DNA of 64,000 nucleotides from Schmidtea nova (taxonomy: Eukaryota). Within the stretch, counting starts at the first letter, position 1; every line of letters starts with the position of its first letter. The notes beneath the pieces were generated by a model. That model ran no database searches and had not been told where the DNA came from. It worked only from the letters and a program-made list of their open reading frames with translations. The stretch lies in NCBI GenBank assembly GCA_044892505.1, contig CM097882.1, positions 34,906,001 through 34,970,000 on the forward strand. Direction: 5' to 3'. The position numbers and the translations under genes were made by a program. Below are positions 1 through 64,000 of this stretch, in pieces.

Positions 1-949
1 GGTAGAGTTTTGAAGCCCAGTTCGTTCAATTTCTGAAGAGTCACTTTTGCCACATGCGGTCGAGCGTTGTCATAGAGAAGTATCGGTCATTTTCCATTGA
101 CTAATGATTGAAGTAAACGCTGAAATTCTTGGTGTATTTTGTCAATTTCATGGCAATGTACTTCGTTGCTGTTATAATTTCGTCAGAATCAAAGTAGTTG
201 TGGAATATTAATCATCTTGCTGACCACCAAACATTGAAGATAACCTTATATTGATGAAGATTTTGTAGTGGGAAAGGTTTTGGAGCTTTATCTACGCTGA
301 GTCTCTGCAAGGAACGACGACCCTTGTCGCAGAGAATCGATGTTTCGTCACATGTCACACTACGAAAGAGAAATTATTGGTTTTGTTTCGCAAAAGACCA
401 GAGCAGACTTCTTAACGACAAAACCTTTGATTTTCGAATAATTCGTGCGACACCCATTCGTCGAGCTTTTTCGATTTTCCAATTTAATGTTAATGTCGAA
501 AAATTATTAAATGACACACGTTCAGTTCTTATGAATGTTCTCGAGTTGTTTTGCGTAAGTCTGCTTCAATAATTTCCATCAATAAGTCGCCCACTATCGC
601 AAAAGGACGTCTGCAATCTCAATATCTATCAAGGCTCTCATCTTTACTACGACATCTTTGGATCAAATGCCGAGCTGTACGTTCATTGATCGACTCCTGG
701 CTAAATGCTTGGATGATATTGCGAGAGGTTTCAGATGCATTATGGCCTAGTTTAAACTCTTACAATAAAATCGATCGAATTTGCACTTTTCTGTCTTTAA
801 TTAAAATAGAAAATATTTAACAAAAAATTTAATATATATAAAAAGAGGATTTTTAAATAAATAATCATATTAATATAATAACATTGATAAGAAAATAGGG
901 TGTCAAAGTGAAAACGAATAAAAACGGTATTTATTTTTGTCCAACTTAA
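1..949 (-). mobile_element. Decayed mariner copy 0 (5' part; truncated by window edge)
   Basis: Minus-strand translation of 801 to 1 gives IKDRKVQIRSILL*EFKLGHNASETSRN...VTCDE...VWWSA...DNARPHVAKVTLQKLNELGFKTL. TIR ends at 949, followed by TA at 950-951. Confidence 0.95.
923..949 (-). repeat. Mariner 5' TIR (representative; present in every unit)
   Basis: Reverse complement TTAAGTTGGACAAAAATAAATACCGTT matches the other end TTAGGTTGGACTAAAAATAATTGCCGTT at 24/28 positions. TA follows at 950-951. Confidence 0.92.
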
Positions 950-1761
950 TACTTTGCTATTATTCTTTACTTTCATTATAATTGTCAATCCTATCATATT
1001 ATTCTTGAATTTTTGAAAAACGTATCATTTAATGTCTTGTATTATTCATAAAATATTAATGTGTAAAAATGTAATACTAATTCCATTCAATAAAGTACAG
1101 AATTAAATAGAGTCTTTGTAACTCATGAGGTTGGTTTATGATAATTTGTATTAAAGAAAAAACGTTGTTAAACACAATTATAAATTATATAGCATTCGAC
1201 AGTAATTGTCTTTCGTGAATATATTTTGACAATATATTATTTTTATAGCCTTTTAGTAATTATAAAACAAACGTAGAAATTATTTACTAGATTTTAAATT
1301 GTAATATAAAATCCAGTATATTTGGTTTTGAAAATAATAACATATTTAAACAATAATCACAATCTTGGAATATTAATTCGCTTATTCGTTATAAATACTT
1401 TTTTAGACTATTGTCTTAATTTTAAACAGTATGATTTGATTGTATATATTCTATCAAGTTAAATTGATTTATTTGAATAATAATAAATTTAAATATTATT
1501 CCAACTTGAAAATCATGTATGTACGTTTGCCTATCTAGTAAAACATACAAGCTTATAATGTAATGCTCACTTGAAAGTGAAGTTGATCGTGCTAAATAAT
1601 GATATCTTAATTTTTGTTGCAATAGAAAAAATCAAATGATTTATTTATCTTATTGAAATTTTGACAGAAAATTGATCGCGCAAAAATGATACATTACATT
1701 TGCCGTTTCAAAATCTTTTCAAATATATTTGCTTTGCTACTTATAATTAATTATATTTAGT

Positions 1762-1783
1762 TAGTTAATTTAATTTATTTTAG
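1762..1783 (+). promoter_or_regulatory. 3' splice acceptor region (representative; present in every unit)
   Basis: tagttaatttaatttattttAG|CC has a T-rich tract, TTAAT branch-point-like motifs and a terminal AG. An in-frame TAA lies just upstream at 1771-1773. Confidence 0.72.
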
Positions 1784-2053
1784 CCAACCTAACATATACT
1801 GTTACTATTACTCCTCAGTCAAGTACTCTAAGCTTTCTAGAAAATGATTCGATAGAATGCCAAATCGTACCGGTGCCTAATACAAACACCAGTCAAATCG
1901 CCTTTTTCTTGACGAATATAAAATCAGACTATTATTTTAGAAACGATCTGATTATTCATATCAAGCCTAAAAAAGAATTGGTAAATACTCCTATTTGTGC
2001 TGTTTGTGGTAATATAGCAAACATGAACGCTACTCAATGCTATACTTTGATAG
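1784..2053 (+). CDS. Exon copy 1: 90-codon phase 1-1 putative Ig-like domain exon
   Basis: The stop-free frame 1774-2073 is tightly bracketed by AG (1782-1783) and GTGAGT (2054-2059). Hand count gives 91/270 G+C (34%) versus 18/100 in 1681-1780. Confidence 0.78.
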
Positions 2054-5000
2054 GTGAGTATGCATTGTTTTTTTGAAATTTATATATCTTTAATTATATC
2101 TCAAATACTTTTCAATTCATTATTTCACTCAACGTTCACTCAGTAAATTCGTTCAAGTCAGTCAGGTATTTCTAATTTCTTTTCCAACAAAGGAAAACGT
2201 ATTAGGTTGGACTAAAAATAATTGCCGTTTTTAAATATAAATTATAAAACTTTGTATCTCAGGTTAGAATATGTTTTGTCAATAGAAATAAAAATCATTC
2301 GAATCTACGCATTTTGCAAACAAGAAACAAGTTTACTTATTTCTTTAGCATAAAATTCTTGAGTTCTGGAATCAATGAATTCTTCGAAGGCTATTTTAGC
2401 TTCTGTTTGATTTTTTTCAAACATTCTCTTGTATGAAGAGTTCGATATGCTTGCAAAATTTGTTAGTCAGTTTTTGAGAGCTCTACTAAGAGAGCTGAAG
2501 AGGTAGAGTTTTGAAGCCCAGTTCGTTCAATTTCTGAAGAGTCACTTTTGCCACATGCGGTCGAGCGTTGTCATAGAGAAGTATCGGTCATTTTCCATTG
2601 ACTAATGATTGAAGTAAACGCTGAAATTCTTGGTGTATTTTGTCAATTTCATGGCAATGTACTTCGTTGCTGTTATAATTTCGTCAGAATCAAAGTAGTT
2701 GTGGAATATTAATCATCTTGCTGACCACCAAACATTGACCATAACCTTATATTGATGAAGATTTTGTAGTGGGAAAGGTTTTGGAGCATTATCTACGCTG
2801 AGTCTCTGCAAGGAACGACGACCCTTGTCGCAGAGAATCGATGTTTCGTCACATGTCACACTACGAAAGAGAAATTATTGGTTTTGTTGCGCAAAAGACC
2901 AGAGCAGACTTCTTAACGACAAAACCTTTGATTTTCGAATAATTCGTGCGACACCCATTCGTCGAACTTTTTCGATTTTCCAATTTAATGTTAATGTCGA
3001 AAAATTATTAAATGACACACGTTCAGTTCTTATGAATGTTCTCGAGTTGTTTTGCGTAAGTCTGCTTCAATAATTTCCATCAATAAGTCGCCCACTATCG
3101 CAAAAGGACGTCTGCAATCTCAATATCTATCAAGGCTCTCATCTTTACTACGACATCTTTGGATCAAATGCCGAGCTGTACGTTCATTGATCGACTCCTG
3201 GCTAAATGCTTGGATGATATTGCGAGAGGTTTCAGATGCATTATGGCCTAGTTTAAACTCTTACAATAAAATCGATCGAATTTGCACTTTTCTGTCTTTA
3301 ATTAAAATAGAAAATATTTAACAAAAAATTTAATATATATAAAAAGAGGATTTTTAAATAAATAATCATATTAATATAATAACATTGATAAGAAAATAGG
3401 GTGTCAAAGTGAAAACGAATAAAAACGGTATTTATTTTTGTCCAACTTAATACTTTGCTATTATTCTTTACTTTCATTATAATTGTCAATCCTATCATAT
3501 TATTCTTGAATTTTTGAAAAACGTATCATTTAATGTCTTGTATTATTCATAAATATTAATGTGTAAAAATGTAATACTAATTCCATTCAATAAAGTACAG
3601 AATTAAATAGAGTCTTTGTAACTCATGAGGTTGGTTTATGATAATTTGTATTAAAGAAAAAACGTTGTTAAACACAATTATAAATTATATAGCATTCGAC
3701 AGTAATTGTCTTTTGTGAATATATTTTGACAATATATTATTTTTATAGCCTTTTAGTAATTATAAAACAAACGTAGAAATTATTTACTAGATTTTAAATT
3801 GTAATATAAAATCCAGTATATTTGGTTTTGAAAATAATAACATATTTAAACAATAATCACAATCTTGGAATATTAATTCGCTTATTCGTTATAAATACTT
3901 TTTTAGACTATTGTCTTAATTTTAAACAGTATGATTTGATTGTATATATTCTATCAAGTTAAATTGATTTATTTGAATAATAATAAATTTAAATATTATT
4001 CCAACTTGAAAATCATGTATGTACGTTTGCCTATCTAGTAAAACATACAAACTTATAATGTAATGCTCACTTGAAAGTGAAGTTGATCGTGCTAAATAAT
4101 GATATCTTAATTTTTGTTGCAATAGAAAAAATCAAATGATTTATTTATCTTATTGAAATTTTGACAGAAAATTGATCGCGCAAAAATGATACATTACATT
4201 TGCCGTTTCAAAATCTTTTCAAATATATTTGCTTTGCTACTTATAATTAATTATATTTAGTTAGTTAATTTAATTTATTTTAGCCAACCTAACATATACT
4301 GTTACTATTACTCCTCAGTCAAGTACTCTAAGCTTTCTAGAAAATGATTCGATAGAATGCCAAATCGTACCGGTGCCTAATACAAACACCAGTCAAATCG
4401 CCTTTTTCTTGACGAATATAAAATCAGACTATTATTTTAGAAACGATCTGATTATTCATATCAAGCCTAAAAAAGAATTGGTAAATACTCCTATTTGTGC
4501 TGTTTGTGGTAATATAGCAAACATGAACGCTACTCAATGCTATACTTTGATAGGTGAGTATGCATTGTTTTTTTGAAATTTATATATCTTTAATTATATC
4601 TCAAATACTTTTCAATTCATTATTTCACTCAACGTTCACTCAGTAAATTCGTTCAAGTCAGTCAGGTATTTCTAATTTCTTTTCCAACAAAGGAAAACGT
4701 ATTAGGTTGGACTAAAAATAATTGCCGTTTTTAAATATAAATTATAAAACTTTGTATCTCAGGTTAGAATATGTTTTGTCAATAGAAATAAAAATCATTC
4801 GAATCTACGCATTTTGCAAACAAGAAACAAGTTTACTTATTTCTTTAGCATAAAATTCTTGAGTTCTGGAATCAATGAATTCTTCGAAGGCTATTTTAGC
4901 TTCTGTTTGATTTTTTTCAAACATTCTCTTGTATGAAGAGTTCGATATGCTTGCAAAATTTGTTAGTCAGTTTTTGAGAGCTCTACTAAGAGAGCTGAAG

Positions 5001-8000
5001 AGGTAGAGTTTTGAAGCCCAGTTCGTTCAATTTCTGAAGAGTCACTTTTGCCACATGCGGTCGAGCGTTGTCATAGAGAAGTATCGGTCATTTTCCATTG
5101 ACTAATGATTGAAGTAAACGCTGAAATTCTTGGTGTATTTTGTCAATTTCATGGCAATGTACTTCGTTGCTGTTATAATTTCGTCAGAATCAAAGTAGTT
5201 GTGGAATATTAATCATCTTGCTGACCACCAAACATTGACCATAACCTTATATTGATGAAGATTTTGTAGTGGGAAAGGTTTTGGAGCTTTATCTACGCTG
5301 AGTCTCTGCAAGGAACGACGACCCTTGTCGCAGAGAATCGATGTTTCGTCACATGTCACACTACGAAAGAGAAATTATTGGTTTTGTTGCGCAAAAGACC
5401 AGAGCAGACTTCTTAACGACAAAACCTTTGATTTTCGAATAATTCGTGCGACACCCATTCGTCGAGCTTTTTCGATTTTCCAATTTAATGTTAATGTCGA
5501 AAAATTATTAAATGACACACGTTCAGTTCTTATGAATGTTCTCGAGTAGTTTTGCGTAAGTCTGCTTCAATAATTTCCATCAATAAGTCGCCCACTATCG
5601 CAAAAGGACGTCTGCAATCTCAATATCTATCAAGGCTCTCATCTTTACTACGACATCTTTGGATCAAATGCCGAGCTGTACGTTCATTGATCGACTCCTG
5701 GCTAAATGCTTGGATGATATTGCGAGAGGTTTCAGATGCATTATGGCCTAGTTTAAACTCTTACAATAAAATCGATCGAATTTGCACTTTTCTGTCTTTA
5801 ATTAAAATAGAAAATATTTAACAAAAAATTTAATATATATAAAAAGAGGATTTTTAAATAAATAATCATATTAATATAATAACATTGATAAGAAAATAGG
5901 GTGTCAAAGTGAAAACGAATAAAAACGGTATTTATTTTTGTCCAACTTAATACTTTGCTATTATTCTTTACTTTCATTATAATTGTCAATCCTATCATAT
6001 TATTCTTGAATTTTTGAAAAACGTATCATTTAATGTCTTGTATTATTCATAAAATATTAATGTGTAAAAATGTAATACTAATTCCATTCAATAAAGTACA
6101 GAATTAAATAGAGTCTTTGTAACTCATGAGGTTGGTTTATGATAATTTGTATTAAAGAAAAAACGTTGTTAAACACAATTATAAATTATATAGCATTCGA
6201 CAGTAATTGTCTTTCGTGAATATATTTTGACAATATATTATTTTTATAGCCTTTTAGTAATTATAAAACAAACGTAGAAATTATTTACTAGATTTTAAAT
6301 TGTAATATAAAATCCAGTATATTTGGTTTTGAAAATAATAACATATTTAAACAATAATCACAATCTTGGAATATTAATTCGCTTATTCGTTATAAATACT
6401 TTTTTAGACTATTGTCTTAATTTTAAACAGTATGATTTGATTGTATATATTCTATCAAGTTAAATTGATTTATTTGAATAATAATAAATTTAAATATTAT
6501 TCCAACTTGAAAATCATGTATGTACGTTTGCCTATCTAGTAAAACATACAAGCTTATAATGTAATGCTCACTTGGAAGTGAAGTTGATCGTGCTAAATAA
6601 TGATATCTTAATTTTTGTTGCAATAGAAAAAATCAAATGATTTATTTATCTTATTGAAATTTTGACAGAAAATTGATCGCGCAAAAATGATACATTACAT
6701 TTGCCGTTTCAAAATCTTTTCAAATATATTTGCTTTGCTACTTATAATTAATTATATTTAGTTAGTTAATTTAATTTATTTTAGCCAACCTAACATATAC
6801 TGTTACTATTACTCCTCAGTCAAGTACTCTAAGCTTTCTAGAAAATGATTCGATAGAATGCCAAATCGTACCGGTGCCTAATACAAACACCAGTCAAATC
6901 GCCTTTTTCTTGACGAATATAAAATCAGACTATTATTTTAGAAACGATCTGATTATTCATATCAAGCCTAAAAAAGAATTGGTAAATACTCCTATTTGTG
7001 CTGTTTGTGGTAATATAGCAAACATGAACGCTACTCAATGCTATACTTTGATAGGTGAGTATGCATTGTTTTTTTGAAATTTATATATCTTTAATTATAT
7101 CTCAAATACTTTTCAATTCATTATTTCACTCAACGTTCACTCAGTAAATTCGTTCAAGTCAGTCAGGTATTTCTAATTTCTTTTCCAACAAAGGAAAACG
7201 TATTAGGTTGGACTAAAAATAATTGCCGTTTTTAAATATAAATTATAAAACTTTGTATCTCAGGTTAGAATATGGTTTGTCAATAGAAATAAAAATCATT
7301 CGAATCTACGCATTTTGCAAACAAGAAACAAGTTTACTTATTTCTTTAGCATAAAATTCTTGAGTTCTGGAATCAATGAATTCTTCGAAGGCTATTTTAG
7401 CTTCTGTTTGATTTTTTTCAAACATTCTCTTGTATGAAGAGTTCGATATGCTTGCAAAATTTGTTAGTCAGTTTTTGAGAGCTCTACTAAGAGAGCTGAA
7501 GAGGTAGAGTTTTGAAGCCCAGTTCGTTCAATTTCTGAAGAGTCACTTTTGCCACATGCGGTCGAGCGTTGTCATAGAGAAGTATCGGTCATTTTCCATT
7601 GACTAATGATTGAAGTAAACGCTGAAATTCTTGGTGTATTTTGTCAATTTCATGGCAATGTACTTCGTTGCTGTTATAATTTCGTCAGAATCAAAGTAGT
7701 TGTGGAATATTAATCATCTTGCTGACCACCAAACATTGACCATAACCTTATATTGATGAAGATTTTGTAGTGGGAAAGGTTTTGGAGCTTTATCTACGCT
7801 GAGTCTCTGCAAGGAACGACGACCCTTGTCGCAGAGAATCGATGTTTCGTCACATGTCACACTACGAAAGAGAAATTATTGGTTTTGTTGCGCAAAAGAC
7901 CAGAGCAGACTTCTTAACGACAAAACCTTTGATTTTCGAATAATTCGTGCGACACCCATTCGTCGAGCTTTTTCGATTTTCCAATTTAATGTTAATGTCG

Positions 8001-11000
8001 AAAAATTATTAAATGACACACGTTCAGTTCTTATGAATGTTCTCGAGTAGTTTTGCGTAAGTCTGCTTCAATAATTTCCATCAATAAGTCGCCCACTATC
8101 GCAAAAGGACGTCTGCAATCTCAATATCTATCAAGGCTCTCATCTTTACTACGACATCTTTGGATCAAATGCCGAGCTGTACGTTCATTGATCGACTCCT
8201 GGCTAAATGCTTGGATGATATTGCGAGAGGTTTCAGATGCATTATGGCCTAGTTTAAACTCTTACAATAAAATCGATCGAATTTGCACTTTTCTGTCTTT
8301 AATTAAAATAGAAAATATTTAACAAAAAATTTAATATATATAAAAAGAGGATTTTTAAATAAATAATCATATTAATATAATAACATTGATAAGAAAATAG
8401 GGTGTCAAAGTGAAAACGAATAAAAACGGTATTTATTTTTGTCCAACTTAATACTTTGCTATTATTCTTTACTTTCATTATAATTGTCAATCCTATCATA
8501 TTATTCTTGAATTTTTGAAAAACGTATCATTTAATGTCTTGTATTATTCATAAAATATTAATGTGTAAAAATGTAATACTAATTCCATTCAATAAAGTAC
8601 AGAATTAAATAGAGTCTTTGTAACTCATGAGGTTGGTTTATGATAATTTGTATTAAAGAAAAAACGTTGTTAAACACAATTATAAATTATATAGCATTCG
8701 ACAGTAATTGTCTTTTGTGAATATATTTTGACAATATATTATTTTTATAGCCTTTTAGTAATTATAAAACAAACGTAGAAATTATTTACTAGATTTTAAA
8801 TTGTAATATAAAATCCAGTATATTTGGTTTTGAAAATAATAACATATTTAAACAATAATCACAATCTTGGAATATTAATTCGCTTATTCGTTATAAATAC
8901 TTTTTTAGACTATTGTCTTAATTTTAAACAGTATGATTTGATTGTATATATTCTATCAAGTTAAATTGATTTATTTGAATAATAATAAATTTAAATATTA
9001 TTCCAACTTGAAAATCATGTATGTACGTTTGCCTATCTAGTAAAACATACAAGCTTATAATGTAATGCTCACTTGAAAGTGAAGTTGATCGTGCTAAATA
9101 ATGATATCTTAATTTTTGTTGCAATAGAAAAAATCAAATGATTTATTTATCTTATTGAAATTTTGACAGAAAATTGATCGCGCAAAAATGATACATTACA
9201 TTTGCCGTTTCAAAATCTTTTCAAATATATTTGCTTTGCTACTTATAATTAATTATATTTAGTTAGTTAATTTAATTTATTTTAGCCAACCTAACATATA
9301 CTGTTACTATTACTCCTCAGTCAAGTACTCTAAGCTTTCTAGAAAATGATTCGATAGAATGCCAAATCGTACCGGTGCCTAATACAAACACCAGTCAAAT
9401 CGCCTTTTTCTTGACGAATATAAAATCAGACTATTATTTTAGAAACGATCTGATTATTCATATCAAGCCTAAAAAAGAATTGGTAAATACTCCTATTTGT
9501 GCTGTTTGTGGTAATATAGCAAACATGAACGCTACTCAATGCTATACTTTGATAGGTGAGTATGCATTGTTTTTTTGAAATTTATATATCTTTAATTATA
9601 TCTCAAATACTTTTCAATTCATTATTTCACTCAACGTTCACTCAGTAAATTCGTTCAAGTCAGTCAGGTATTTCTAATTTCTTTTCCAACAAAGGAAAAC
9701 GTATTAGGTTGGACTAAAAATAATTGCCGTTTTTAAATATAAATTATAAAACTTTGTATCTCAGGTTAGAATATGGTTTGTCAATAGAAATAAAAATCAT
9801 TCGAATCTACGCATTTTGCAAACAAGAAACAAGTTTACTTATTTCTTTAGCATAAAATTCTTGAGTTCTGGAATCAATGAATTCTTCGAAGGCTATTTTA
9901 GCTTCTGTTTGATTTTTTTCAAACATTCTCTTGTATGAAGAGTTCGATATGCTTGCAAAATTTGTTAGTCAGTTTTTGAGAGCTCTACTAAGAGAGCTGA
10001 AGAGGTAGAGTTTTGAAGCCCAGTTCGTTCAATTTCTGAAGAGTCACTTTTGCCACATGCGGTCGAGCGTTGTCATAGAAAAGTATCGGTCATTTTCCAT
10101 TGACTAATGATTGAAGTAAACGCTGAAATTCTTGGTGTATTTTGTCAATTTCATGGCAATGTACTTCGTTGCTGTTATAATTTCGTCAGAATCAAAGTAG
10201 TTGTGGAATATTAATCATCTTGCTGACCACCAAACATTGACCATAACCTTATATTGATGAAGATTTTGTAGTGGGAAAGGTTTTGGAGCTTTATCTACGC
10301 TGAGTCTCTGCAAGGAACGACGACCCTTGTCGCAGAGAATCGATGTTTCGTCACATGTCACACTACGAAAGAGAAATTATTGGTTTTGTTGCGCAAAAGA
10401 CCAGAGCAGACTTCTTAACGACAAAACCTTTGATTTTCGAATAATTCGTGCGACACCCATTCGTCGAGCTTTTTCGATTTTCCAATTTAATGTTAATGTC
10501 GAAAAATTATTAAATGACACACGTTCAGTTCTTATGAATGTTCTCGAGTAGTTTTGCGTAAGTCTGCTTCAATAATTTCCATCAATAAGTCGCCCACTAT
10601 CGCAAAAGGACGTCTGCAATCTCAATATCTATCAAGGCTCTCATCTTTACTACGACATCTTTGGATCAAATGCCGAGCTGTACGTTCATTGATCGACTCC
10701 TGGCTAAATGCTTGGATGATATTGCGAGAGGTTTCAGATGCATTATGGCCTAGTTTAAACTCTTACAATAAAATCGATCGAATTTGCACTTTTCTGTCTT
10801 TAATTAAAATAGAAAATATTTAACAAAAAATTTAATATATATAAAAAGAGGATTTTTAAATAAATAATCATATTAATATAATAACATTGATAAGAAAATA
10901 GGGTGTCAAAGTGAAAACGAATAAAAACGGTATTTATTTTTGTCCAACTTAATACTTTGCTATTATTCTTTACTTTCATTATAATTGTCAATCCTATCAT

Positions 11001-14000
11001 ATTATTCTTGAATTTTTGAAAAACGTATCATTTAATGTCTTGTATTATTCATAAAATATTAATGTGTAAAAATGTAATACTAATTCCATTCAATAAAGTA
11101 CAGAATTAAATAGAGTCTTTGTAACTCATGAGGTTGGTTTATGATAATTTGTATTAAAGAAAAAACGTTGTTAAACACAATTATAAATTATATAGCATTC
11201 GACAGTAATTTCTTTTGTGAATATATTTTGACAATATATTATTTTTATAGCCTTTTAGTAATTATAAAACAAACGTAGAAATTATTTACTAGATTTTAAA
11301 TTGTAATATAAAATCCAGTATATTTGGTTTTGAAAATAATAACATATTTAAACAATAATCACAATCTTGGAATATTAATTCGCTTATTCGTTATAAATAC
11401 TTTTTTAGACTATTGTCTTAATTTTAAACAGTATGATTTGATTGTATATATTCTATCAAGTTAAATTGATTTATTTGAATAATAATAAATTTAAATATTA
11501 TTCCAACTTGAAAATCATGTATGTACGTTTGCCTATCTAGTAAAACATACAAGCTTATAATGTAATGCTCACTTGAAAGTGAAGTTGATCGTGCTAAATA
11601 ATGATATCTTAATTTTTGTTGCAATAGAAAAAATCAAATGATTTATTTATCTTATTGAAATTTTGACAGAAAATTGATCGCGCAAAAATGATACATTACA
11701 TTTGCCGTTTCAAAATCTTTTCAAATATATTTGCTTTGCTACTTATAATTAATTATATTTAGTTAGTTAATTTAATTTATTTTAGCCAACCTAACATATA
11801 CTGTTACTATTACTCCTCAGTCAAGTACTCTAAGCTTTCTAGAAAATGATTCGATAGAATGCCAAATCGTACCGGTGCCTAATACAAACACCAGTCAAAT
11901 CGCCTTTTTCTTGACGAATATAAAATCAGACTATTATTTTAGAAACGATCTGATTATTCATATCAAGCCTAAAAAAGAATTGGTAAATACTCCTATTTGT
12001 GCTGTTTGTGGTAATATAGCAAACATGAACGCTACTCAATGCTATACTTTGATAGGTGAGTATGCATTGTTTTTTTGAAATTTATATATCTTTAATTATA
12101 TCTCAAATACTTTTCAATTCATTATTTCACTCAACGTTCACTCAGTAAATTCGTTCAAGTCAGTCAGGTATTTCTAATTTCTTTTCCAACAAAGGAAAAC
12201 GTATTAGGTTGGACTAAAAATAATTGCCGTTTTTAAATATAAATTATAAAACTTTGTATCTCAGGTTAGAATATGGTTTGTCAATAGAAATAAAAATCAT
12301 TCGAATCTACGCATTTTGCAAACAAGAAACAAGTTTACTTATTTCTTTAGCATAAAATTCTTGAGTTCTGGAATCAATGAATTCTTCGAAGGCTATTTTA
12401 GCTTCTGTTTGATTTTTTTCAAACATTCTCTTGTATGAAGAGTTCGATATGCTTGCAAAATTTGTTAGTCAGTTTTTGAGAGCTCTACTAAGAGAGCTGA
12501 AGAGGTAGAGTTTTGAAGCCCAGTTCGTTCAATTTCTGAAGAGTCACTTTTGCCACATGCGGTCGAGCGTTGTCATAGAAAAGTATCGGTCATTTTCCAT
12601 TGACTAATGATTGAAGTAAACGCTGAAATTCTTGGTGTATTTTGTCAATTTCATGGCAATGTACTTCGTTGCTGTTATAATTTCGTCAGAATCAAAGTAG
12701 TTGTGGAATATTAATCATCTTGCTGACCACCAAACATTGACCATAACCTTATATTGATGAAGATTTTGTAGTGGGAAAGGTTTTGGAGCTTTATCTACGC
12801 TGAGTCTCTGCAAGGAACGACGACCCTTGTCGCAGAGAATCGATGTTTCGTCACATGTCACACTACGAAAGAGAAATTATTGGTTTTGTTGCGCAAAAGA
12901 CCAGAGCAGACTTCTTAACGACAAAACCTTTGATTTTCGAATAATTCGTGCGACACCCATTCGTCGAGCTTTTTCGATTTTCCAATTTAATGTTAATGTC
13001 GAAAAATTATTAAATGACACACGTTCAGTTCTTATGAATGTTCTCGAGTAGTTTTGCGTAAGTCTGCTTCAATAATTTCCATCAATAAGTCGCCCACTAT
13101 CGCAAAAGGACGTCTGCAATCTCAATATCTATCAAGGCTCTCATCTTTACTACGACATCTTTGGATCAAATGCCGAGCTGTACGTTCATTGATCGACTCC
13201 TGGCTAAATGCTTGGATGATATTGCGAGAGGTTTCAGATGCATTATGGCCTAGTTTAAACTCTTACAATAAAATCGATCGAATTTGCACTTTTCTGTCTT
13301 TAATTAAAATAGAAAATATTTAACAAAAAATTTAATATATATAAAAAGAGGATTTTTAAATAAATAATCATATTAATATAATAACATTGATAAGAAAATA
13401 GGGTGTCAAAGTGAAAACGAATAAAAACGGTATTTATTTTTGTCCAACTTAATACTTTGCTATTATTCTTTACTTTCATTATAATTGTCAATCCTATCAT
13501 ATTATTCTTGAATTTTTGAAAAACGTATCATTTAATGTCTTGTATTATTCATAAAATATTAATGTGTAAAAATGTAATACTAATTCCATTCAATAAAGTA
13601 CAGAATTAAATAGAGTCTTTGTAACTCATGAGGTTGGTTTATGATAATTTGTATTAAAGAAAAAACGTTGTTAAACACAATTATAAATTATATAGCATTC
13701 GACAGTAATTTCTTTTGTGAATATATTTTGACAATATATTATTTTTATAGCCTTTTAGTAATTATAAAACAAACGTAGAAATTATTTACTAGATTTTAAA
13801 TTGTAATATAAAATCCAGTATATTTGGTTTTGAAAATAATAACATATTTAAACAATAATCACAATCTTGGAATATTAATTCGCTTATTCGTTATAAATAC
13901 TTTTTTAGACTATTGTCTTAATTTTAAACAGTATGATTTGATTGTATATATTCTATCAAGTTAAATTGATTTATTTGAATAATAATAAATTTAAATATTA

Positions 14001-17000
14001 TTCCAACTTGAAAATCATGTATGTACGTTTGCCTATCTAGTAAAACATACAAGCTTATAATGTAATGCTCACTTGAAAGTGAAGTTGATCGTGCTAAATA
14101 ATGATATCTTAATTTTTGTTGCAATAGAAAAAATCAAATGATTTATTTATCTTATTGAAATTTTGACAGAAAATTGATCGCGCAAAAATGATACATTACA
14201 TTTGCCGTTTCAAAATCTTTTCAAATATATTTGCTTTGCTACTTATAATTAATTATATTTAGTTAGTTAATTTAATTTATTTTAGCCAACCTAACATATA
14301 CTGTTACTATTACTCCTCAGTCAAGTACTCTAAGCTTTCTAGAAAATGATTCGATAGAATGCCAAATCGTACCGGTGCCTAATACAAACACCAGTCAAAT
14401 CGCCTTTTTCTTGACGAATATAAAATCAGACTATTATTTTAGAAACGATCTGATTATTCATATCAAGCCTAAAAAAGAATTGGTAAATACTCCTATTTGT
14501 GCTGTTTGTGGTAATATAGCAAACATGAACGCTACTCAATGCTATACTTTGATAGGTGAGTATGCATTGTTTTTTTGAAATTTATATATCTTTAATTATA
14601 TCTCAAATACTTTTCAATTCATTATTTCACTCAACGTTCACTCAGTAAATTCGTTCAAGTCAGTCAGGTATTTCTAATTTCTTTTCCAACAAAGGAAAAC
14701 GTATTAGGTTGGACTAAAAATAATTGCCGTTTTTAAATATAAATTATAAAACTTTGTATCTCAGGTTAGAATATGGTTTGTCAATAGAAATAAAAATCAT
14801 TCGAATCTACGCATTTTGCAAACAAGAAACAAGTTTACTTATTTCTTTAGCATAAAATTCTTGAGTTCTGGAATCAATGAATTCTTCGAAGGCTATTTTA
14901 GCTTCTGTTTGATTTTTTTCAAACATTCTCTTGTATGAAGAGTTCGATATGCTTGCAAAATTTGTTAGTCAGTTTTTGAGAGCTCTACTAAGAGAGCTGA
15001 AGAGGTAGAGTTTTGAAGCCCAGTTCGTTCAATTTCTGAAGAGTCACTTTTGCCACATGCGGTCGAGCGTTGTCATAGAAAAGTATCGGTCATTTTCCAT
15101 TGACTAATGATTGAAGTAAACGCTGAAATTCTTGGTGTATTTTGTCAATTTCATGGCAATGTACTTCGTTGCTGTTATAATTTCGTCAGAATCAAAGTAG
15201 TTGTGGAATATTAATCATCTTGCTGACCACCAAACATTGACCATAACCTTATATTGATGAAGATTTTGTAGTGGGAAAGGTTTTGGAGCTTTATCTACGC
15301 TGAGTCTCTGCAAGGAACGACGACCCTTGTCGCAGAGAATCGATGTTTCGTCACATGTCACACTACGAAAGAGAAATTATTGGTTTTGTTGCGCAAAAGA
15401 CCAGAGCAGACTTCTTAACGACAAAACCTTTGATTTTCGAATAATTCGTGCGACACCCATTCGTCGAGCTTTTTCGATTTTCCAATTTAATGTTAATGTC
15501 GAAAAATTATTAAATGACACACGTTCAGTTCTTATGAATGTTCTCGAGTAGTTTTGCGTAAGTCTGCTTCAATAATTTCCATCAATAAGTCGCCCACTAT
15601 CGCAAAAGGACGTCTGCAATCTCAATATCTATCAAGGCTCTCATCTTTACTACGACATCTTTGGATCAAATGCCGAGCTGTAGGTTCATTGATCGACTCC
15701 TGGCTAAATGCTTGGATGATATTGCGAGAGGTTTCAGATGCATTATGGCCTAGTTTAAACTCTTACAATAAAATCGATCGAATTTGCACTTTTCTGTCTT
15801 TAATTAAAATAGAAAATATTTAACAAAAAATTTAATATATATAAAAAGAGGATTTTTAAATAAATAATCATATTAATATAATAACATTGATAAGAAAATA
15901 GGGTGTCAAAGTGAAAACGAATAAAAACGGTATTTATTTTTGTCCAACTTAATACTTTGCTATTATTCTTTACTTTCATTATAATTGTCAATCCTATCAT
16001 ATTATTCTTGAATTTTTGAAAAACGTATCATTTAATGTCTTGTATTATTCATAAAATATTAATGTGTAAAAATGTAATACTAATTCCATTCAATAAAGTA
16101 CAGAATTAAATAGAGTCTTTGTAACTCATGAGGTTGGTTTATGATAATTTGTATTAAAGAAAAAACGTTGTTAAACACAATTATAAATTATATAGCATTC
16201 GACAGTAATTTCTTTTGTGAATATATTTTGACAATATATTATTTTTATAGCCTTTTAGTAATTATAAAACAAACGTAGAAATTATTTACTAGATTTTAAA
16301 TTGTAATATAAAATCCAGTATATTTGGTTTTGAAAATAATAACATATTTAAACAATAATCACAATCTTGGAATATTAATTCGCTTATTCGTTATAAATAC
16401 TTTTTTAGACTATTGTCTTAATTTTAAACAGTATGATTTGATTGTATATATTCTATCAAGTTAAATTGATTTATTTGAATAATAATAAATTTAAATATTA
16501 TTCCAACTTGAAAATCATGTATGTACGTTTGCCTATCTAGTAAAACATACAAGCTTATAATGTAATGCTCACTTGAAAGTGAAGTTGATCGTGCTAAATA
16601 ATGATATCTTAATTTTTGTTGCAATAGAAAAAATCAAATGATTTATTTATCTTATTGAAATTTTGACAGAAAATTGATCGCGCAAAAATGATACATTACA
16701 TTTGCCGTTTCAAAATCTTTTCAAATATATTTGCTTTGCTACTTATAATTAATTATATTTAGTTAGTTAATTTAATTTATTTTAGCCAACCTAACATATA
16801 CTGTTACTATTACTCCTCAGTCAAGTACTCTAAGCTTTCTAGAAAATGATTCGATAGAATGCCAAATCGTACCGGTGCCTAATACAAACACCAGTCAAAT
16901 CGCCTTTTTCTTGACGAATATAAAATCAGACTATTATTTTAGAAACGATCTGATTATTCATATCAAGCCTAAAAAAGAATTGGTAAATACTCCTATTTGT

Positions 17001-20000
17001 GCTGTTTGTGGTAATATAGCAAACATGAACGCTACTCAATGCTATACTTTGATAGGTGAGTATGCATTGTTTTTTTGAAATTTATATATCTTTAATTATA
17101 TCTCAAATACTTTTCAATTCATTATTTCACTCAACGTTCACTCAGTAAATTCGTTCAAGTCAGTCAGGTATTTCTAATTTCTTTTCCAACAAAGGAAAAC
17201 GTATTAGGTTGGACTAAAAATAATTGCCGTTTTTAAATATAAATTATAAAACTTTGTATCTCAGGTTAGAATATGGTTTGTCAATAGAAATAAAAATCAT
17301 TCGAATCTACGCATTTTGCAAACAAGAAACAAGTTTACTTATTTCTTTAGCATAAAATTCTTGAGTTCTGGAATCAATGAATTCTTCGAAGGCTATTTTA
17401 GCTTCTGTTTGATTTTTTTCAAACATTCTCTTGTATGAAGAGTTCGATATGCTTGCAAAATTTGTTAGTCAGTTTTTGAGAGCTCTACTAAGAGAGCTGA
17501 AGAGGTAGAGTTTTGAAGCCCAGTTCGTTCAATTTCTGAAGAGTCACTTTTGCCACATGCGGTCGAGCGTTGTCATAGAAAAGTATCGGTCATTTTCCAT
17601 TGACTAATGATTGAAGTAAACGCTGAAATTCTTGGTGTATTTTGTCAATTTCATGGCAATGTACTTCGTTGCTGTTATAATTTCGTCAGAATCAAAGTAG
17701 TTGTGGAATATTAATCATCTTGCTGACCACCAAACATTGACCATAACCTTATATTGATGAAGATTTTGTAGTGGGAAAGGTTTTGGAGCTTTATCTACGC
17801 TGAGTCTCTGCAAGGAACGACGACCCTTGTCGCAGAGAATCGATGTTTCGTCACATGTCACACTACGAAAGAGAAATTATTGGTTTTGTTGCGCAAAAGA
17901 CCAGAGCAGACTTCTTAACGACAAAACCTTTGATTTTCGAATAATTCGTGCGACACCCATTCGTCGAGCTTTTTCGATTTTCCAATTTAATGTTAATGTC
18001 GAAAAATTATTAAATGACACACGTTCAGTTCTTATGAATGTTCTCGAGTAGTTTTGCGTAAGTCTGCTTCAATAATTTCCATCAATAAGTCGCCCACTAT
18101 CGCAAAAGGACGTCTGCAATCTCAATATCTATCAAGGCTCTCATCTTTACTACGACATCTTTGGATCAAATGCCGAGCTGTAGGTTCATTGATCGACTCC
18201 TGGCTAAATGCTTGGATGATATTGCGAGAGGTTTCAGATGCATTATGGCCTAGTTTAAACTCTTACAATAAAATCGATCGAATTTGCACTTTTCTGTCTT
18301 TAATTAAAATAGAAAATATTTAACAAAAAATTTAATATATATAAAAAGAGGATTTTTAAATAAATAATCATATTAATATAATAACATTGATAAGAAAATA
18401 GGGTGTCAAAGTGAAAACGAATAAAAACGGTATTTATTTTTGTCCAACTTAATACTTTGCTATTATTCTTTACTTTCATTATAATTGTCAATCCTATCAT
18501 ATTATTCTTGAATTTTTGAAAAACGTATCATTTAATGTCTTGTATTATTCATAAAATATTAATGTGTAAAAATGTAATACTAATTCCATTCAATAAAGTA
18601 CAGAATTAAATAGAGTCTTTGTAACTCATGAGGTTGGTTTATGATAATTTGTATTAAAGAAAAAACGTTGTTAAACACAATTATAAATTATATAGCATTC
18701 GACAGTAATTTCTTTTGTGAATATATTTTGACAATATATTATTTTTATAGCCTTTTAGTAATTATAAAACAAACGTAGAAATTATTTACTAGATTTTAAA
18801 TTGTAATATAAAATCCAGTATATTTGGTTTTGAAAATAATAACATATTTAAACAATAATCACAATCTTGGAATATTAATTCGCTTATTCGTTATAAATAC
18901 TTTTTTAGACTATTGTCTTAATTTTAAACAGTATGATTTGATTGTATATATTCTATCAAGTTAAATTGATTTATTTGAATAATAATAAATTTAAATATTA
19001 TTCCAACTTGAAAATCATGTATGTACGTTTGCCTATCTAGTAAAACATACAAGCTTATAATGTAATGCTCACTTGAAAGTGAAGTTGATCGTGCTAAATA
19101 ATGATATCTTAATTTTTGTTGCAATAGAAAAAATCAAATGATTTATTTATCTTATTGAAATTTTGACAGAAAATTGATCGCGCAAAAATGATACATTACA
19201 TTTGCCGTTTCAAAATCTTTTCAAATATATTTGCTTTGCTACTTATAATTAATTATATTTAGTTAGTTAATTTAATTTATTTTAGCCAACCTAACATATA
19301 CTGTTACTATTACTCCTCAGTCAAGTACTCTAAGCTTTCTAGAAAATGATTCGATAGAATGCCAAATCGTACCGGTGCCTAATACAAACACCAGTCAAAT
19401 CGCCTTTTTCTTGACGAATATAAAATCAGACTATTATTTTAGAAACGATCTGATTATTCATATCAAGCCTAAAAAAGAATTGGTAAATACTCCTATTTGT
19501 GCTGTTTGTGGTAATATAGCAAACATGAACGCTACTCAATGCTATACTTTGATAGGTGAGTATGCATTGTTTTTTTGAAATTTATATATCTTTAATTATA
19601 TCTCAAATACTTTTCAATTCATTATTTCACTCAACGTTCACTCAGTAAATTCGTTCAAGTCAGTCAGGTATTTCTAATTTCTTTTCCAACAAAGGAAAAC
19701 GTATTAGGTTGGACTAAAAATAATTGCCGTTTTTAAATATAAATTATAAAACTTTGTATCTCAGGTTAGAATATGGTTTGTCAATAGAAATAAAAATCAT
19801 TCGAATCTACGCATTTTGCAAACAAGAAACAAGTTTACTTATTTCTTTAGCATAAAATTCTTGAGTTCTGGAATCAATGAATTCTTCGAAGGCTATTTTA
19901 GCTTCTGTTTGATTTTTTTCAAACATTCTCTTGTATGAAGAGTTCGATATGCTTGCAAAATTTGTTAGTCAGTTTTTGAGAGCTCTACTAAGAGAGCTGA

Positions 20001-23000
20001 AGAGGTAGAGTTTTGAAGCCCAGTTCGTTCAATTTCTGAAGAGTCACTTTTGCCACATGCGGTCGAGCGTTGTCATAGAGAAGTATCGGTCATTTTCCAT
20101 TGACTAATGATTGAAGTAAACGCTGAAATTCTTGGTGTATTTTGTCAATTTCATGGCAATGTACTTCGTTGCTGTTATAATTTCGTCAGAATCAAAGTAG
20201 TTGTGGAATATTAATCATCTTGCTGACCACCAAACATTGACCATAACCTTATATTGATGAAGATTTTGTAGTGGGAAAGGTTTTGGAGCTTTATCTACGC
20301 TGAGTCTCTGCAAGGAACGACGACCCTTGTCGCAGAGAATCGATGTTTCGTCACATGTCACACTACAAAAGAGAAATTATTGGTTTTGTTGCGCAAAAGA
20401 CCAGAGCAGACTTCTTAACGACAAAACCTTTGATTTTCGAATAATTCGTGCGACACCCATTCGTCGAGCTTTTTCGATTTTCCAATTTAATGTTAATGTC
20501 GAAAAATTATTAAATGACACACGTTCAGTTCTTATGAATGTTCTCGAGTAGTTTTGCGTAAGTCTGCTTCAATAATTTCCATCAATAAGTCGCCCACTAT
20601 CGCAAAAGGACGTCTGCAATCTCAATATCTATCAAGGCTCTCATCTTTACTACGACATCTTTGGATCAAATGCCGAGCTGTACGTTCATTGATCGACTCC
20701 TGGCTAAATGCTTGGATGATATTGCGAGAGGTTTCAGATGCATTATGGCCTAGTTTAAACTCTTACAATAAAATCGATCGAATTTGCACTTTTCTGTCTT
20801 TAATTAAAATAGAAAATATTTAACAAAAAATTTAATATATATAAAAAGAGGATTTTTAAATAAATAATCATATTAATATAATAACATTGATAAAAAAATA
20901 GGGTGTCAAAGTGAAAACGAATAAAAACGGTATTTATTTTTGTCCAACTTAATACTTTGCTATTATTCTTTACTTTCATTATAATTGTCAATCCTATCAT
21001 ATTATTCTTGAATTTTTGAAAAACGTATCATTTAATGTCTTGTATTATTCATAAAATATTAATGTGTAAAAATGTAATACTAATTCCATTCAATAAAGTA
21101 CAGAATTAAATAGAGTCTTTGTAACTCATGAGGTTGGTTTATGATAATTTGTATTAAAGAAAAAACGTTGTTAAACACAATTATAAATTATATAGCATTC
21201 GACAGTAATTGTCTTTCGTGAATATATTTTGACAATATATTATTTTTATAGCCTTTTAGTAATTATAAAACAAACGTAGAAATTATTTACTAGATTTTAA
21301 ATTGTAATATAAAATCCAGTATATTTGGTTTTGAAAATAATAACATATTTAAACAATAATCACAATCTTGGAATATTAATTCGCTTATTCGTTATAAATA
21401 CTTTTTTAGACTTTTGTCTTAATTTTAAACAGTATGATTTGATTGTATATATTCTATCAAGTTAAATTGATTTATTTGAATAATAATAAATTTAAATATT
21501 ATTCCAACTTGAAAATCATGTATGTACGTTTGCCTATCTAGTAAAACATACAAGCTTATAATGTAATGCTCACTTGAAAGTGAAGTTGATCGTGCTAAAT
21601 AATGATATCTTAATTTTTGTTGCAATAGAAAAAATCAAATGATTTATTTATCTTATTGAAATTTTGACAGAAAATTGATCGCGCAAAAATGATACATTAC
21701 ATTTGCCGTTTCAAAATCTTTTCAAATATATTTGCTTTGCTACTTATAATTAATTATATTTAGTTAGTTAATTTAATTTATTTTAGCCAACCTAACATAT
21801 ACTGTTACTATTACTCCTCAGTCAAGTACTCTAAGCTTTCTAGAAAATGATTCGATAGAATGCCAAATCGTACCGGTGCCTAATACAAACACCAGTCAAA
21901 TCGCCTTTTTCTTGACGAATATAAAATCAGACTATTATTTTAGAAACGATCTGATTATTCATATCAAGCCTAAAAAAGAATTGGTAAATACTCCTATTTG
22001 TGCTGTTTGTGGTAATATAGCAAACATGAACGCTACTCAATGCTATACTTTGATAGGTGAGTATGCATTGTTTTTTTGAAATTTATATATCTTTAATTAT
22101 ATCTCAAATACTATTCAATTCATTATTTCACTCAACGTTCACTCAGTAAATTCGTTCAAGTCAGTCAGGTATTTCTAATTTCTTTTCCAACAAAGGAAAA
22201 CGTATTAGGTTGGACTAAAAATAATTGCCGTTTTTAAATATAAATTATAAAACTTTGTATCTCAGGTTAGAATATGGTTTGTCAATAGAAATAAAAATCA
22301 TTCGAATCTACGCATTTTGCAAACAAGAAACAAGTTTACTTATTTCTTTAGCATAAAATTCTTGAGTTCTGGAATCAATGAATTCTTCGAAGGCTATTTT
22401 AGCTTCTGTTTGATTTTTTTCAAACATTCTCTTGTATGAAGAGTTCGATATGCTTGCAAAATTTGTTAGTAAGTTTTTGAGAGCTCTACTAAGAGAGTTG
22501 AAGAGGTAGAGTTTTGAAGCCCAGTTCGTTCAATTTCTGAAGAGTCACTTTTGCCACATGCGGTCGAGCGTTGTCATAGAGAAGTATCGGTCATTTTCCA
22601 TTGACTAATGATTGAAGTAAACGCTGAAATTCTTGGTGTATTTTGTCAATTTCATGGCAATGTACTTCGTTGCTGTTATAATTTCGTCAGAATCAAAGTA
22701 GTTGTGGAATATTAATCATCTTGCTGACCACCAAACATTGACCATAACCTTATATTGATGAAGATTTTGTAGTGGGAAAGGTTTTGGAGCTTTATCTACG
22801 CTGAGTCTCTGCAAGGAACGACGACCCTTGTCGCAGAGAATCGATGTTTCGTCACATGTCACACTACGAAAGAGAAATTATTGGTTTTGTTGTGCAAAAG
22901 ACCAGAGCAGACTTCTTAACGACAAAACCTTTGATTTTCGAATAATTCGTGCGACACCCATTCGTCGAGCTTTTTCGATTTTCCAATTTAATGTTAATGT

Positions 23001-62064: not shown

Positions 62065-62212
62065 GTGAGTATGCATTGTTTTTTTGAAATTTATATATCT
62101 TTAATTATATCTCAAATACTTTTCAATTCATTATTTCACTCAACGTTCACTCAGTAAATTCGTTCAAGTCAGTCAGGTATTTCTAATTTCTTTTCCAACA
62201 AAGGAAAACGTA

Positions 62213-63461: not shown

Positions 63462-64000
63462 TACTTTGCTATTATTCTTTACTTTCATTATAATTGTCAA
63501 TCCTATCATATTATTCTTGAATTTTTGAAAAACGTATCATTTAATGTCTTGTATTATTCATAAAATATTAATGTGTAAAAATGTAATACTAATTCCATTC
63601 AATAAAGTACAGAATTAAATAGAGTCTTTGTAACTCATGAGGTTGGTTTATGATAATTTGTATTAAAGAAAAAACGTTGTTAAACACAATTATAAATTAT
63701 ATAGCATTCAACAGTAATTGTCTTTCGTGAATATATTTTGACAATATATTATTTTTATAGCCTTTTAGTAATTATAAAACAAACGTAGAAATTATTTACT
63801 AGATTTTAAATTGTAATATAAAATCCAGTATATTTGGTTTTGAAAATAATAACATATTTAAACAATAATCACAATCTTGGAATATTAATTCGCTTATTCG
63901 TTATAAATACTTTTTTAGACTATTGTCTTAATTTTAAACAGTATGATTTGATTGTATATATTCTATCAAGTTAAATTGATTTATTTGAATAATAATAAAT

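What the first reader, a model, noticed from the sequence alone, without database searches (positions are those of the whole stretch)
1784..2053. The 90-aa repeat looks like a non-canonical, heavily N-glycosylated Ig-type domain with an extra cysteine pair
Seen: alternating-hydrophobic strand-like segments YTVTITP, SIECQIV, QIAFFL, DLIIHI, PICAVC and QCYTLI. Cys occurs at 26, 72, 75 and 86, and there are four N-X-S/T sequons (NLT, NDS, NTS, NAT), i.e. 100 across the window. Established: C2/I-set Ig domains are about 90 aa with a B-to-F-strand disulfide of similar spacing (46 residues here), a C-strand Trp and a DxGxYxC corner. Here the Trp position appears to be Phe and the tyrosine corner is absent, so the fold call is pattern-based and only about even odds. 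Inference: C75-C86 may be a second disulfide. At about 4 nm per Ig domain, 25 copies would form a roughly 100 nm glycosylated stalk, suiting a spacer, adhesion, glycocalyx or recognition role.
Basis: partly seen in the sequence, partly recalled or inferred. Interest (0 to 1): 0.7.

Follow-up and report, generated by a model that had tools for sequence, protein, structure and literature searches.

The report
Repeated exon encoding orphan Ig-like domain

Summary
The window is one tandem array of 25 copies of a 2500/2501-bp unit, 99.3-100% identical. Each unit has a 270-nt open segment with an identical AG acceptor and GTGAGT donor and phase 1-1 symmetry.

The Ig reading is supported at the level of fold. 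AlphaFold2 with a six-row alignment gave pLDDT 89.8 and pTM 0.80, with 7-8 strands. All top structural matches are Ig-like sandwiches (Z about 8, rmsd 2.6-2.9 Å over 84-86 of 89 residues). No Pfam or PDB sequence profile matches, so this is an orphan family.

A search of 1.84 billion representatives found only four true relatives. All four cysteines are conserved in them. Two relatives show domain, then a transmembrane helix, then a 5-residue tail, so the family is type I membrane proteins.

- **Sequons:** they are only modestly enriched (4 against 1.8 expected, P 0.08).
- **Disulfides:** the pairing could not be measured.
- **Expression:** only DNA runs hold the sequence.
- **Intron:** each one carries a dead mariner, so the amplification is recent.

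This scan noted other near-identical exon cassettes in this genome (s1-356151), but not this domain.

The parts
1..64000 (+). Tandem array of a 2500/2501-bp cassette (exon plus intron). It has 25 exon copies and runs off both ends of the window.
   Evidence: Copies are 99.3-100% identical. Mean differences between units rise from 5.7 (neighbours) to 19.5 (20 units apart) per 2501 bp. The unit-to-unit junction is also seen in short-read contigs of 4 DNA runs.
1784..2053 (+). Exon copy 1: 270 nt, phase 1-1, one Ig-like domain. This is the finding itself.
4284..4553 (+). Exon copy 2
   Evidence: 100% identical.
6785..7054 (+). Exon copy 3
   Evidence: 100%.
9286..9555 (+). Exon copy 4
   Evidence: 100%.
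11786..12055 (+). Exon copy 5
   Evidence: 100%.
14286..14555 (+). Exon copy 6
   Evidence: 100%.
16786..17055 (+). Exon copy 7
   Evidence: 100%.
19286..19555 (+). Exon copy 8
   Evidence: 100%.
21787..22056 (+). Exon copy 9
   Evidence: 100%.
24288..24557 (+). Exon copy 10
   Evidence: 100%.
26789..27058 (+). Exon copy 11
   Evidence: 100%.
29290..29559 (+). Exon copy 12 (variants Q37R and N79K)
   Evidence: 99.3%.
31789..32058 (+). Exon copy 13
   Evidence: 100%.
34288..34557 (+). Exon copy 14
   Evidence: 100%.
36787..37056 (+). Exon copy 15
   Evidence: 100%.
39286..39555 (+). Exon copy 16
   Evidence: 100%.
41787..42056 (+). Exon copy 17 (variants V6I and P69L)
44288..44557 (+). Exon copy 18 (V6I)
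46789..47058 (+). Exon copy 19 (V6I)
49290..49559 (+). Exon copy 20 (V6I)
51791..52060 (+). Exon copy 21
   Evidence: 100%.
54292..54561 (+). Exon copy 22
   Evidence: 100%.
56793..57062 (+). Exon copy 23
   Evidence: 100%.
59294..59563 (+). Exon copy 24
   Evidence: 100%.
61795..62064 (+). Exon copy 25 (P69H)
2054..4283 (+). Putative intron of the cassette: 2230 nt, starting GTGAGT and ending TTTTAG. It is repeated in every unit.
   Evidence: A related exon in another sample (L001) aligns only over the exon and about 30-70 nt of flank.
2202..3291 (-). Decayed mariner (Mos1/Hsmar1-like) transposon relic inside the intron, present in every unit. One terminal inverted repeat is kept at 2202-2232. 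The other end is truncated.
   Evidence: Pieces hit Pfam Transposase_1 PF01359 (E 2e-7) and HTH_48 PF17906 (E 6e-7). There are 21 stops across the stretch in the frame tried. Genome-wide depth peaks and loose contig ends lie at 2199/2200, 2232/2233 and 3291.

Best explanation
Window 1784-2053 is a phase 1-1 exon that encodes one complete domain of about 90 residues with an immunoglobulin-like beta-sandwich fold. The domain belongs to a small family, apparently restricted to flatworms, that matches no curated profile.

The domain carries four conserved cysteines, most likely forming one core disulfide between strands B and F and a second one stapling strands F and G. It also has at least one conserved N-glycosylation sequon on strand G.

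Relatives end in a single transmembrane helix and a 5-residue cytoplasmic tail, so the family is type I surface proteins with an ectodomain made of these modules.

In this genome the exon was amplified at least 25 times together with its 2.23-kb intron, which already held a dead mariner. The likely process is unequal crossing-over. Because the exon is phase-symmetric, any number of copies splices in frame. Read serially, the array would encode at least 25 identical domains, a stalk of roughly 100 nm that acts as a spacer or projection module whose length can change with copy number.

- **Shown:** the array, the intact frames and splice sites, the family, the predicted fold, and the membrane anchor in relatives.
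- **Inferred:** serial splicing, expression, disulfide pairing, glycosylation and the stalk role.
For: **Array**
- 25 copies, 2500/2501 bp, 99.3-100% identical.
- Identical splice contexts in 25 of 25 copies.
- The tandem junction is seen independently in contigs of four DNA runs.
- Divergence grows with distance along the array, as expected for a real array evolving by local exchange.

**Coding**
- A 62% identical exon in another sample (L001) keeps AG/GT, the 270-nt length and all four Cys, while similarity fades within about 30 nt upstream and 70 nt downstream of the exon.
- More distant relatives are P0003 (E 1.5e-7), P0004 (E 3.7e-6) and P0005 (E 1e-4), from 1.84 billion representatives.
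- L002 has a 267-nt exon in the same phase, then a 46-nt GT..AG intron, then an exon with a transmembrane helix, a short tail and a stop.
- P0004 has the same ending. Kyte-Doolittle maxima are 2.9 in both.
- P0005 carries two such domains head to tail without junk between them.
- A diverged copy of the exon in run X4 (19 differences in 240 nt, no indel) shows excess synonymous change: dN/dS 0.21, Fisher P 0.002-0.008.

**Fold**
- AlphaFold2 on A2 gives pLDDT 89.8 and pTM 0.80. All five models score 87-90, with strands at 5-9, 14-15, 22-28, 39-43, 50-53, 56-59, 69-77 and 80-88.
- Foldseek's best rows are LAG-3 D2, poliovirus receptor D3 and Robo1 (E 4e-3 to 8e-3).
- VIA-align gives Z 8.2-7.5, rmsd 2.6-2.9 Å over 81-86 of 89 residues, to the LdtMt2 Ig-like domain, poxvirus interferon decoy receptor D3, MDGA1 and NCAM Ig1.

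**Established knowledge (mine)**
- Ig-superfamily domains are typically encoded by single phase 1-1 exons.
Against: - No RNA run holds the sequence and no spliced joint was seen. All four holders are genomic DNA from one study.
- dN/dS between the window exon and L001 is about 1.15, with differences spread 20/18/20 over codon positions. That pair shows no purifying selection.
- All five variants within the array are non-synonymous, though this lacks power.
- Variable-site density in the exon is not significantly below that of the intron (P 0.31).
- No Pfam or PDB sequence match.
- Structural Z of about 8 lies in the range the tool calls 'middling', and Foldseek E never drops below 1e-3.
- The model rests on only six sequences. 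The single-sequence model was poor (pLDDT 45.6).
- The start and end of the gene lie outside the window, so no signal peptide or anchor is seen for this locus.
- Runs of identical adjacent Ig-like domains are unusual in animals, because neighbouring domains usually diverge to avoid misfolding (PMC4660218).
Confidence: 0.55

Rival explanations
1. Dead or silent macrosatellite. A 2.5-kb genomic piece that happened to contain one exon of a real Ig-like membrane-protein gene was amplified as a satellite-like array. The copies are not spliced into a functional mRNA, or the gene is a pseudogene.
For: - No RNA evidence.
- dN/dS of about 1.15 against L001, and 5 of 5 within-array variants non-synonymous.
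- Exon variant density is not lower than intron density.
- The unit carries a decayed transposon.
- Identical adjacent Ig-like domains are disfavoured in known proteins (PMC4660218).
Against: - All 25 frames and all 50 splice sites are intact, and there are no indels in any exon, while the introns have four indel sites. The array is too young for this to be decisive.
- A diverged copy in the same species shows purifying selection.
- Phase 1-1 symmetry makes every copy number in frame.
- Earlier notes report other apparently real giant genes made of identical exon cassettes in this genome (s1-356151, not tested here).
Confidence: 0.3
2. Assembly artefact. The assembler over-expanded a short duplication into 25 copies.
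For: Very high identity. Copy number could not be calibrated from contig depth.
Against: - The junction 3750 to 1300 is present in contigs of all four DNA runs.
- 66 variable sites are shared by runs of neighbouring units, with divergence rising with distance. A consensus artefact would not produce this.
- Unit lengths vary in blocks (2499, 2500, 2501).
Confidence: 0.05
3. The domain is a beta-sandwich of another class (FN3-like, cadherin-like or new), and the Ig look comes from a shallow-alignment AlphaFold model.
For: - Only six rows in A2.
- Z of about 8 and Foldseek E of 4e-3 or more are generic.
- Bacterial Ig-like domains score as well as animal IgSF domains.
- No C-strand Trp and no tyrosine corner.
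Against: - Five models agree at pLDDT 87-90.
- 84-86 of 89 residues superpose.
- The top rows of three searches are all Ig-like sandwiches, with no FN3 among the listed leaders.
- Cys sits on strands B and F, and the exon is phase 1-1.
Confidence: 0.12

Closest known systems
Animal immunoglobulin-superfamily domains of C2/I-set type (for example NCAM Ig1, MDGA1 Ig3, nectin and poliovirus-receptor D3, LAG-3 D2)
   Same: - About 90 residues and a predicted 7-8-strand two-sheet sandwich.
- Cys on strands B and F.
- One domain per phase 1-1 exon.
- An extracellular setting ahead of a single transmembrane helix in relatives.
- Best structural matches.
   Different: - No sequence-profile match to any Ig-clan family.
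- Phe in place of the C-strand Trp, and no D-x-G-x-Y-x-C corner.
- A second conserved Cys pair on strands F and G.
- Identity to structural matches is only 5-17%.
Human LPA kringle IV-2 intragenic copy-number repeat (5.5-kb unit; PMC4378929)
   Same: A multi-kb exon-plus-intron cassette that encodes a whole disulfide-bonded extracellular domain. It is repeated in frame many times at near identity inside one gene, so protein length follows copy number.
   Different: - The kringle fold, with two exons per unit.
- Polymorphism and expression are proven for LPA and untested here.
- The unit here is 2.5 kb with one exon and an embedded mariner relic.
Bacterial extender regions and 'periscope' proteins, for example MpAFP region II with about 120 identical 104-residue Ig-like repeats (PMC4083281, PMC8201768)
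   Same: Long runs of sequence-identical Ig-like beta-sandwich modules that project a surface protein away from the cell. Length varies by repeat number.
   Different: - Bacterial, with a single open reading frame and no introns.
- Rigidified by Ca2+ rather than by disulfides or glycans.
- No sequence relation. This is a functional analogy only.
Other near-identical exon cassettes and giant repeat genes noted by this scan in the same genome (s1-356151, s1-399574, s1-375987)
   Same: Recent amplification of coding repeats at near identity in the same flatworm genome. One of them is also an exon-plus-intron cassette array.
   Different: - Those encode acidic, plakin or helical modules, not a cysteine-bearing Ig-like domain.
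- They are unchecked AI notes and were not tested here.

Membership tests
Immunoglobulin superfamily (Pfam Ig clan: I-set, C2-set, ig, Ig_3, V-set) | Significant match to a clan sequence profile | tested here: not met
   Pfam scans of the window domain and of all six rows of A2 gave no Ig family even at E up to 10. P0005, P0004, P0003 and P0001 as whole proteins gave none at E up to 1. The best hit was DUF7494 at 17.3 bits against a cut-off of 27, in one member only.
Immunoglobulin superfamily (Pfam Ig clan: I-set, C2-set, ig, Ig_3, V-set) | Two-sheet Greek-key beta-sandwich of 7-9 strands | tested here: met
   Predicted, not solved. pLDDT 89.8. Z 8.2-7.5, rmsd 2.6-2.9 Å over 81-86 of 89 residues to Ig-like domains. 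Foldseek top rows are all Ig-like.
Immunoglobulin superfamily (Pfam Ig clan: I-set, C2-set, ig, Ig_3, V-set) | Inter-sheet disulfide between strands B and F | tested here: inconclusive
   C25 lies in the predicted strand 22-28, and C71 and C74 lie in strand 69-77. C25 is kept in every row that covers it, C74 in all six rows and C71 in five of six. No coordinates are returned, so distances could not be measured. Which of C71 or C74 pairs with C25 is inferred only.
Immunoglobulin superfamily (Pfam Ig clan: I-set, C2-set, ig, Ig_3, V-set) | Conserved Trp on strand C | tested here: not met
   The position is F40, which reads F, F, F, F, K in the five rows that cover it.
Immunoglobulin superfamily (Pfam Ig clan: I-set, C2-set, ig, Ig_3, V-set) | Tyrosine corner D-x-G-x-Y-x-C before the F-strand Cys | tested here: not met
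   The sequence before the F-strand Cys reads V-N-T-P-I-C-A-V-C, with no Tyr or Asp-x-Gly.
Immunoglobulin superfamily (Pfam Ig clan: I-set, C2-set, ig, Ig_3, V-set) | One domain per phase 1-1 exon | tested here: met
   The exon starts with 2 bases and ends with 1 base of split codons. It is 270 nt here, 270 nt in L001 and 267 nt in L002.
Intragenic exon-cassette copy-number repeat (LPA KIV-2 type) | Multi-kb unit holding whole exon(s) for a complete domain, in frame, at near identity | tested here: met
Intragenic exon-cassette copy-number repeat (LPA KIV-2 type) | Serial splicing into one mRNA, and copy-number polymorphism between individuals | not testable with these tools
   No RNA run was found. 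Contig depth cannot give copy number.
Type I single-pass membrane glycoprotein | Signal peptide, ectodomain, one transmembrane helix, cytoplasmic tail | tested here: inconclusive
   The transmembrane helix and 5-residue tail are seen in relatives L002 and P0004. The ends of this locus's gene lie outside the window. No signal peptide was seen anywhere.
Tc1/mariner transposon (the relic in the intron) | Mos1-type HTH and DDE transposase remnants, and a terminal inverted repeat | tested here: met
   PF17906 at E 6e-7 and PF01359 at E 2e-7. A TIR-like end lies at 2202-2232 next to TA (its likeness to the Hsmar1 TIR is from memory). No second TIR was found, so the element is truncated.

The most novel reading that the evidence does not exclude
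A planarian makes a cell-surface protein whose ectodomain is a run of 25 or more sequence-identical Ig-like domains, spliced from identical exon cassettes. This would be an animal counterpart of bacterial 'periscope' or extender adhesins, with stalk length set by a copy-number-variable array. The double disulfide (and perhaps the glycans) of this orphan domain would let it escape the inter-domain misfolding that is thought to forbid identical neighbouring Ig domains.
Probability: 0.35. Interest if true: 0.65.

Novelty: new variant of a known kind. Interest (0 to 1): 0.45.

Why it matters
If the array is expressed, it offers a natural animal test of the rule that adjacent beta-sandwich domains must diverge to avoid misfolding.

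That adds to the poorly known surface proteome of planarians.

It would give a second clear animal example, after LPA, of a whole-domain exon cassette whose copy number can tune protein length.

The embedded dead mariner dates the amplification as later than the transposon's decay. This shows how quickly this genome builds giant genes.

If the array is silent, it is simply a young macrosatellite that captured an exon.

Tried and rejected
- **Tandem Repeats Finder** found nothing because the period exceeds 500. BLASTN in a script replaced it.
- **Single-sequence AlphaFold2** was useless, with pLDDT 45.6.
- **PDB sequence searches** with the single domain and with profile A2 gave only chance rows: protein A, DYRK1A and eL40.
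- **The Pfam DUF7494 hit** (E 0.006) was dropped, because only one of six members shows it.
- **P0002** from the large HMM search of 1.84 billion representative proteins is a bacterial zinc-ribbon repeat protein. It matches only the short I-C-A-V-C-G-N motif and was rejected as a relative.
- **Word-based protein searches** with alignment A2 and with P0005 added no new relatives.
- **P0004 and P0005** have no contig on record, so their gene structure and species stay unknown.
- **Rfam** found nothing in two units.
- **Inverted-repeat search** found no second mariner end.
- **A Dscam-like array of mutually exclusive exons** was considered and rejected, because the copies are identical and give no diversity.
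Its pieces were searched apart.
- In one search a local script added the one split-codon residue (Ala) only to count sequons across the junction. Nothing joined was sent to any search or fold tool.

Full report
**What is in the window**

The window is AT-rich (about 29% G+C) and consists entirely of one tandem array. BLASTN of 1784-2053 against the window finds 25 copies spaced 2499-2501 bp apart, 99.3-100% identical.

Aligning 24 full units gives 66 variable columns in 2501. Neighbouring units differ at 5.7 sites on average, and units 16-20 apart at 19.5. That gradient, together with variants shared by blocks of adjacent units, is what a real array evolving by local unequal exchange looks like. 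A consensus artefact would not look like this.

Contigs from four public DNA runs (one study, two samples) cover the exon and intron contiguously. All of them contain the junction from the end of a unit back to its start.

**The open segment**

In the frame starting at 1786 there are 89 sense codons. The exon begins with two bases and ends with one base of split codons, so it is phase 1-1 and 270 nt long. It is preceded by TTTTAG and followed by GTGAGT, and these contexts are identical in all 25 copies. Stops close the frame 10 nt upstream and 20 nt downstream.

Two stop-free stretches of similar length lie antisense to the transposon relic, so openness alone proves little. Four sequons against 1.8 expected from composition is not significant (P 0.076).

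**The rest of the unit**

Positions 2202-3291 are a decayed mariner on the minus strand. Its pieces hit the Mos1 HTH and the DDE transposase families. One frame across the stretch holds 21 stops. One terminal repeat survives at 2202-2232.

Genome-wide contig depth jumps several-fold exactly over this stretch, with loose ends at its borders. The cassette was therefore amplified after the transposon had inserted and died. No Rfam family matches.

**Is it coding?**

Curated libraries are silent. The word-based protein search found one relative, P0001, at 62% identity. Its 1-kb contig L001 shows a 270-nt exon with AG and GT in the same places. All four Cys are kept, and DNA similarity fades within about 30-70 nt of the exon.

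The exhaustive HMM search of 1.84 billion representatives added P0003, P0004 and P0005. It also returned a false bacterial zinc-ribbon hit.

- **P0003.** Its contig L002 has a 267-nt exon in the same phase, then a 46-nt GT..AG intron, then an exon that reads as a linker, a 19-residue hydrophobic helix, five residues and a stop.
- **P0004.** It independently shows domain, linker, helix and a five-residue end with the same x-H-E-x-x pattern.
- **P0005.** It has two domains head to tail.

Selection tests are mixed:
- Window against L001 gives dN/dS of about 1.15. Part of this comes from a loop where compensating indels are read as substitutions.
- A diverged copy of the exon seen in run X4 (19 changes in 240 nt, no indel) gives dN/dS 0.21, Fisher P 0.002-0.008.
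- Within the array all five variants are non-synonymous, without statistical weight.

I conclude that the domain family is truly protein-coding. Whether this particular array is expressed remains open, because no RNA run holds the sequence.

**Fold**

With the six-row alignment A2, AlphaFold2 gives pLDDT 89.8 and pTM 0.80. All five models score 87-90.

| Search | Best matches | Scores |
|---|---|---|
| Foldseek against PDB | LAG-3 D2, poliovirus receptor D3, Robo1, contactin, NCAM2, bacterial Big_2 | E 4e-3 to 5e-2, TM 0.47-0.63 |
| VIA-align against 48,161 representatives | LdtMt2 Ig-like domain, poxvirus interferon decoy receptor D3, MDGA1, NCAM Ig1, nectin-3 D3 | Z 8.2, 8.1, 7.7, 7.5, 7.2; rmsd 2.6-2.9 Å over 81-86 of 89 residues |
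| VIA-align second look | Agrees with the above | |

These scores are in the tool's 'middling' band. They show a generic Ig-like sandwich, not kinship with any one family. The tight two-residue link between strands 50-53 and 56-59 suggests a D-E hairpin, but the set (C1, C2 or I) is unresolved.

From sequence:
- On strand G the residues M80, A82, Y86 and L88 form the hydrophobic face, so C85 points outward along with the N81 sequon.
- On strand F the face I70/A72/C74 is invariantly hydrophobic across relatives. The face 69/71/73/75/77 tolerates K, R, S and T.
- C74 is invariant. C71 and C85 are both replaced by Ile in the same repeat of P0005.

This is inference only.

**How it most likely works**

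Phase 1-1 symmetry lets any number of cassettes splice in frame. Unequal crossing-over between 2.5-kb units changes the copy number. The product would be a type I membrane glycoprotein with a rod of identical, disulfide-stapled Ig-like modules, about 4 nm each, so 100 nm or more for the 25 copies seen. The array runs off both ends of the window.

The nearest analogues are the LPA kringle IV-2 cassette repeat (PMC4378929) for the genetics, and bacterial extender or periscope proteins (PMC4083281, PMC8201768) for the mechanics. Identical neighbouring Ig-like domains are otherwise avoided because they misfold into each other (PMC4660218). That makes expression of this array the interesting open point.

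**Limits**

- Species names are coded. Earlier notes of this scan call the genome a planarian flatworm.
- The gene's ends are outside the window.

Noticed in passing
window 2202-3291 (and the same place in each unit): A decayed mariner relic on the minus strand, with one Hsmar1-like terminal repeat next to a TA. Its contig depth is 5-20 times that of the rest of the unit, so the family is abundant in this genome.
   Followed up: partly
window 1741-1980, run X4 (sample S2) only: A second contig covers the exon with 19 differences in 240 nt and no indel, at about a quarter of the depth of the main form. It is a diverged paralogous copy, or the edge of the array, with dN/dS 0.21. It is absent from the three runs of sample S1.
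   Followed up: partly
L002:348-494: In a relative from an environmental assembly, the last domain exon is followed by a 46-nt intron and a terminal exon for a transmembrane helix and a 5-residue tail. The tail's x-H-E-x-x ending is shared with P0004.
   Followed up: yes
P0002 (bacterial, 1297 aa): A proline/alanine-rich bacterial membrane protein has at least 12 zinc-ribbon repeats whose motif begins I-C-A-V-C-G-N, like strand F here. It is a chance likeness that produced E 1e-8 in the profile search.
   Followed up: yes
window 2759-3318, + strand: Two stop-free stretches of 101 and 104 codons lie antisense to the mariner relic. They are probably a composition effect and were not examined further.
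   Followed up: no
P0005:142-261: After its two domains of this family, the relative continues with different beta-rich modules. These include a segment with typical Ig A-B strand wording that ends in a B-strand-like Cys. None matches Pfam.
   Followed up: no
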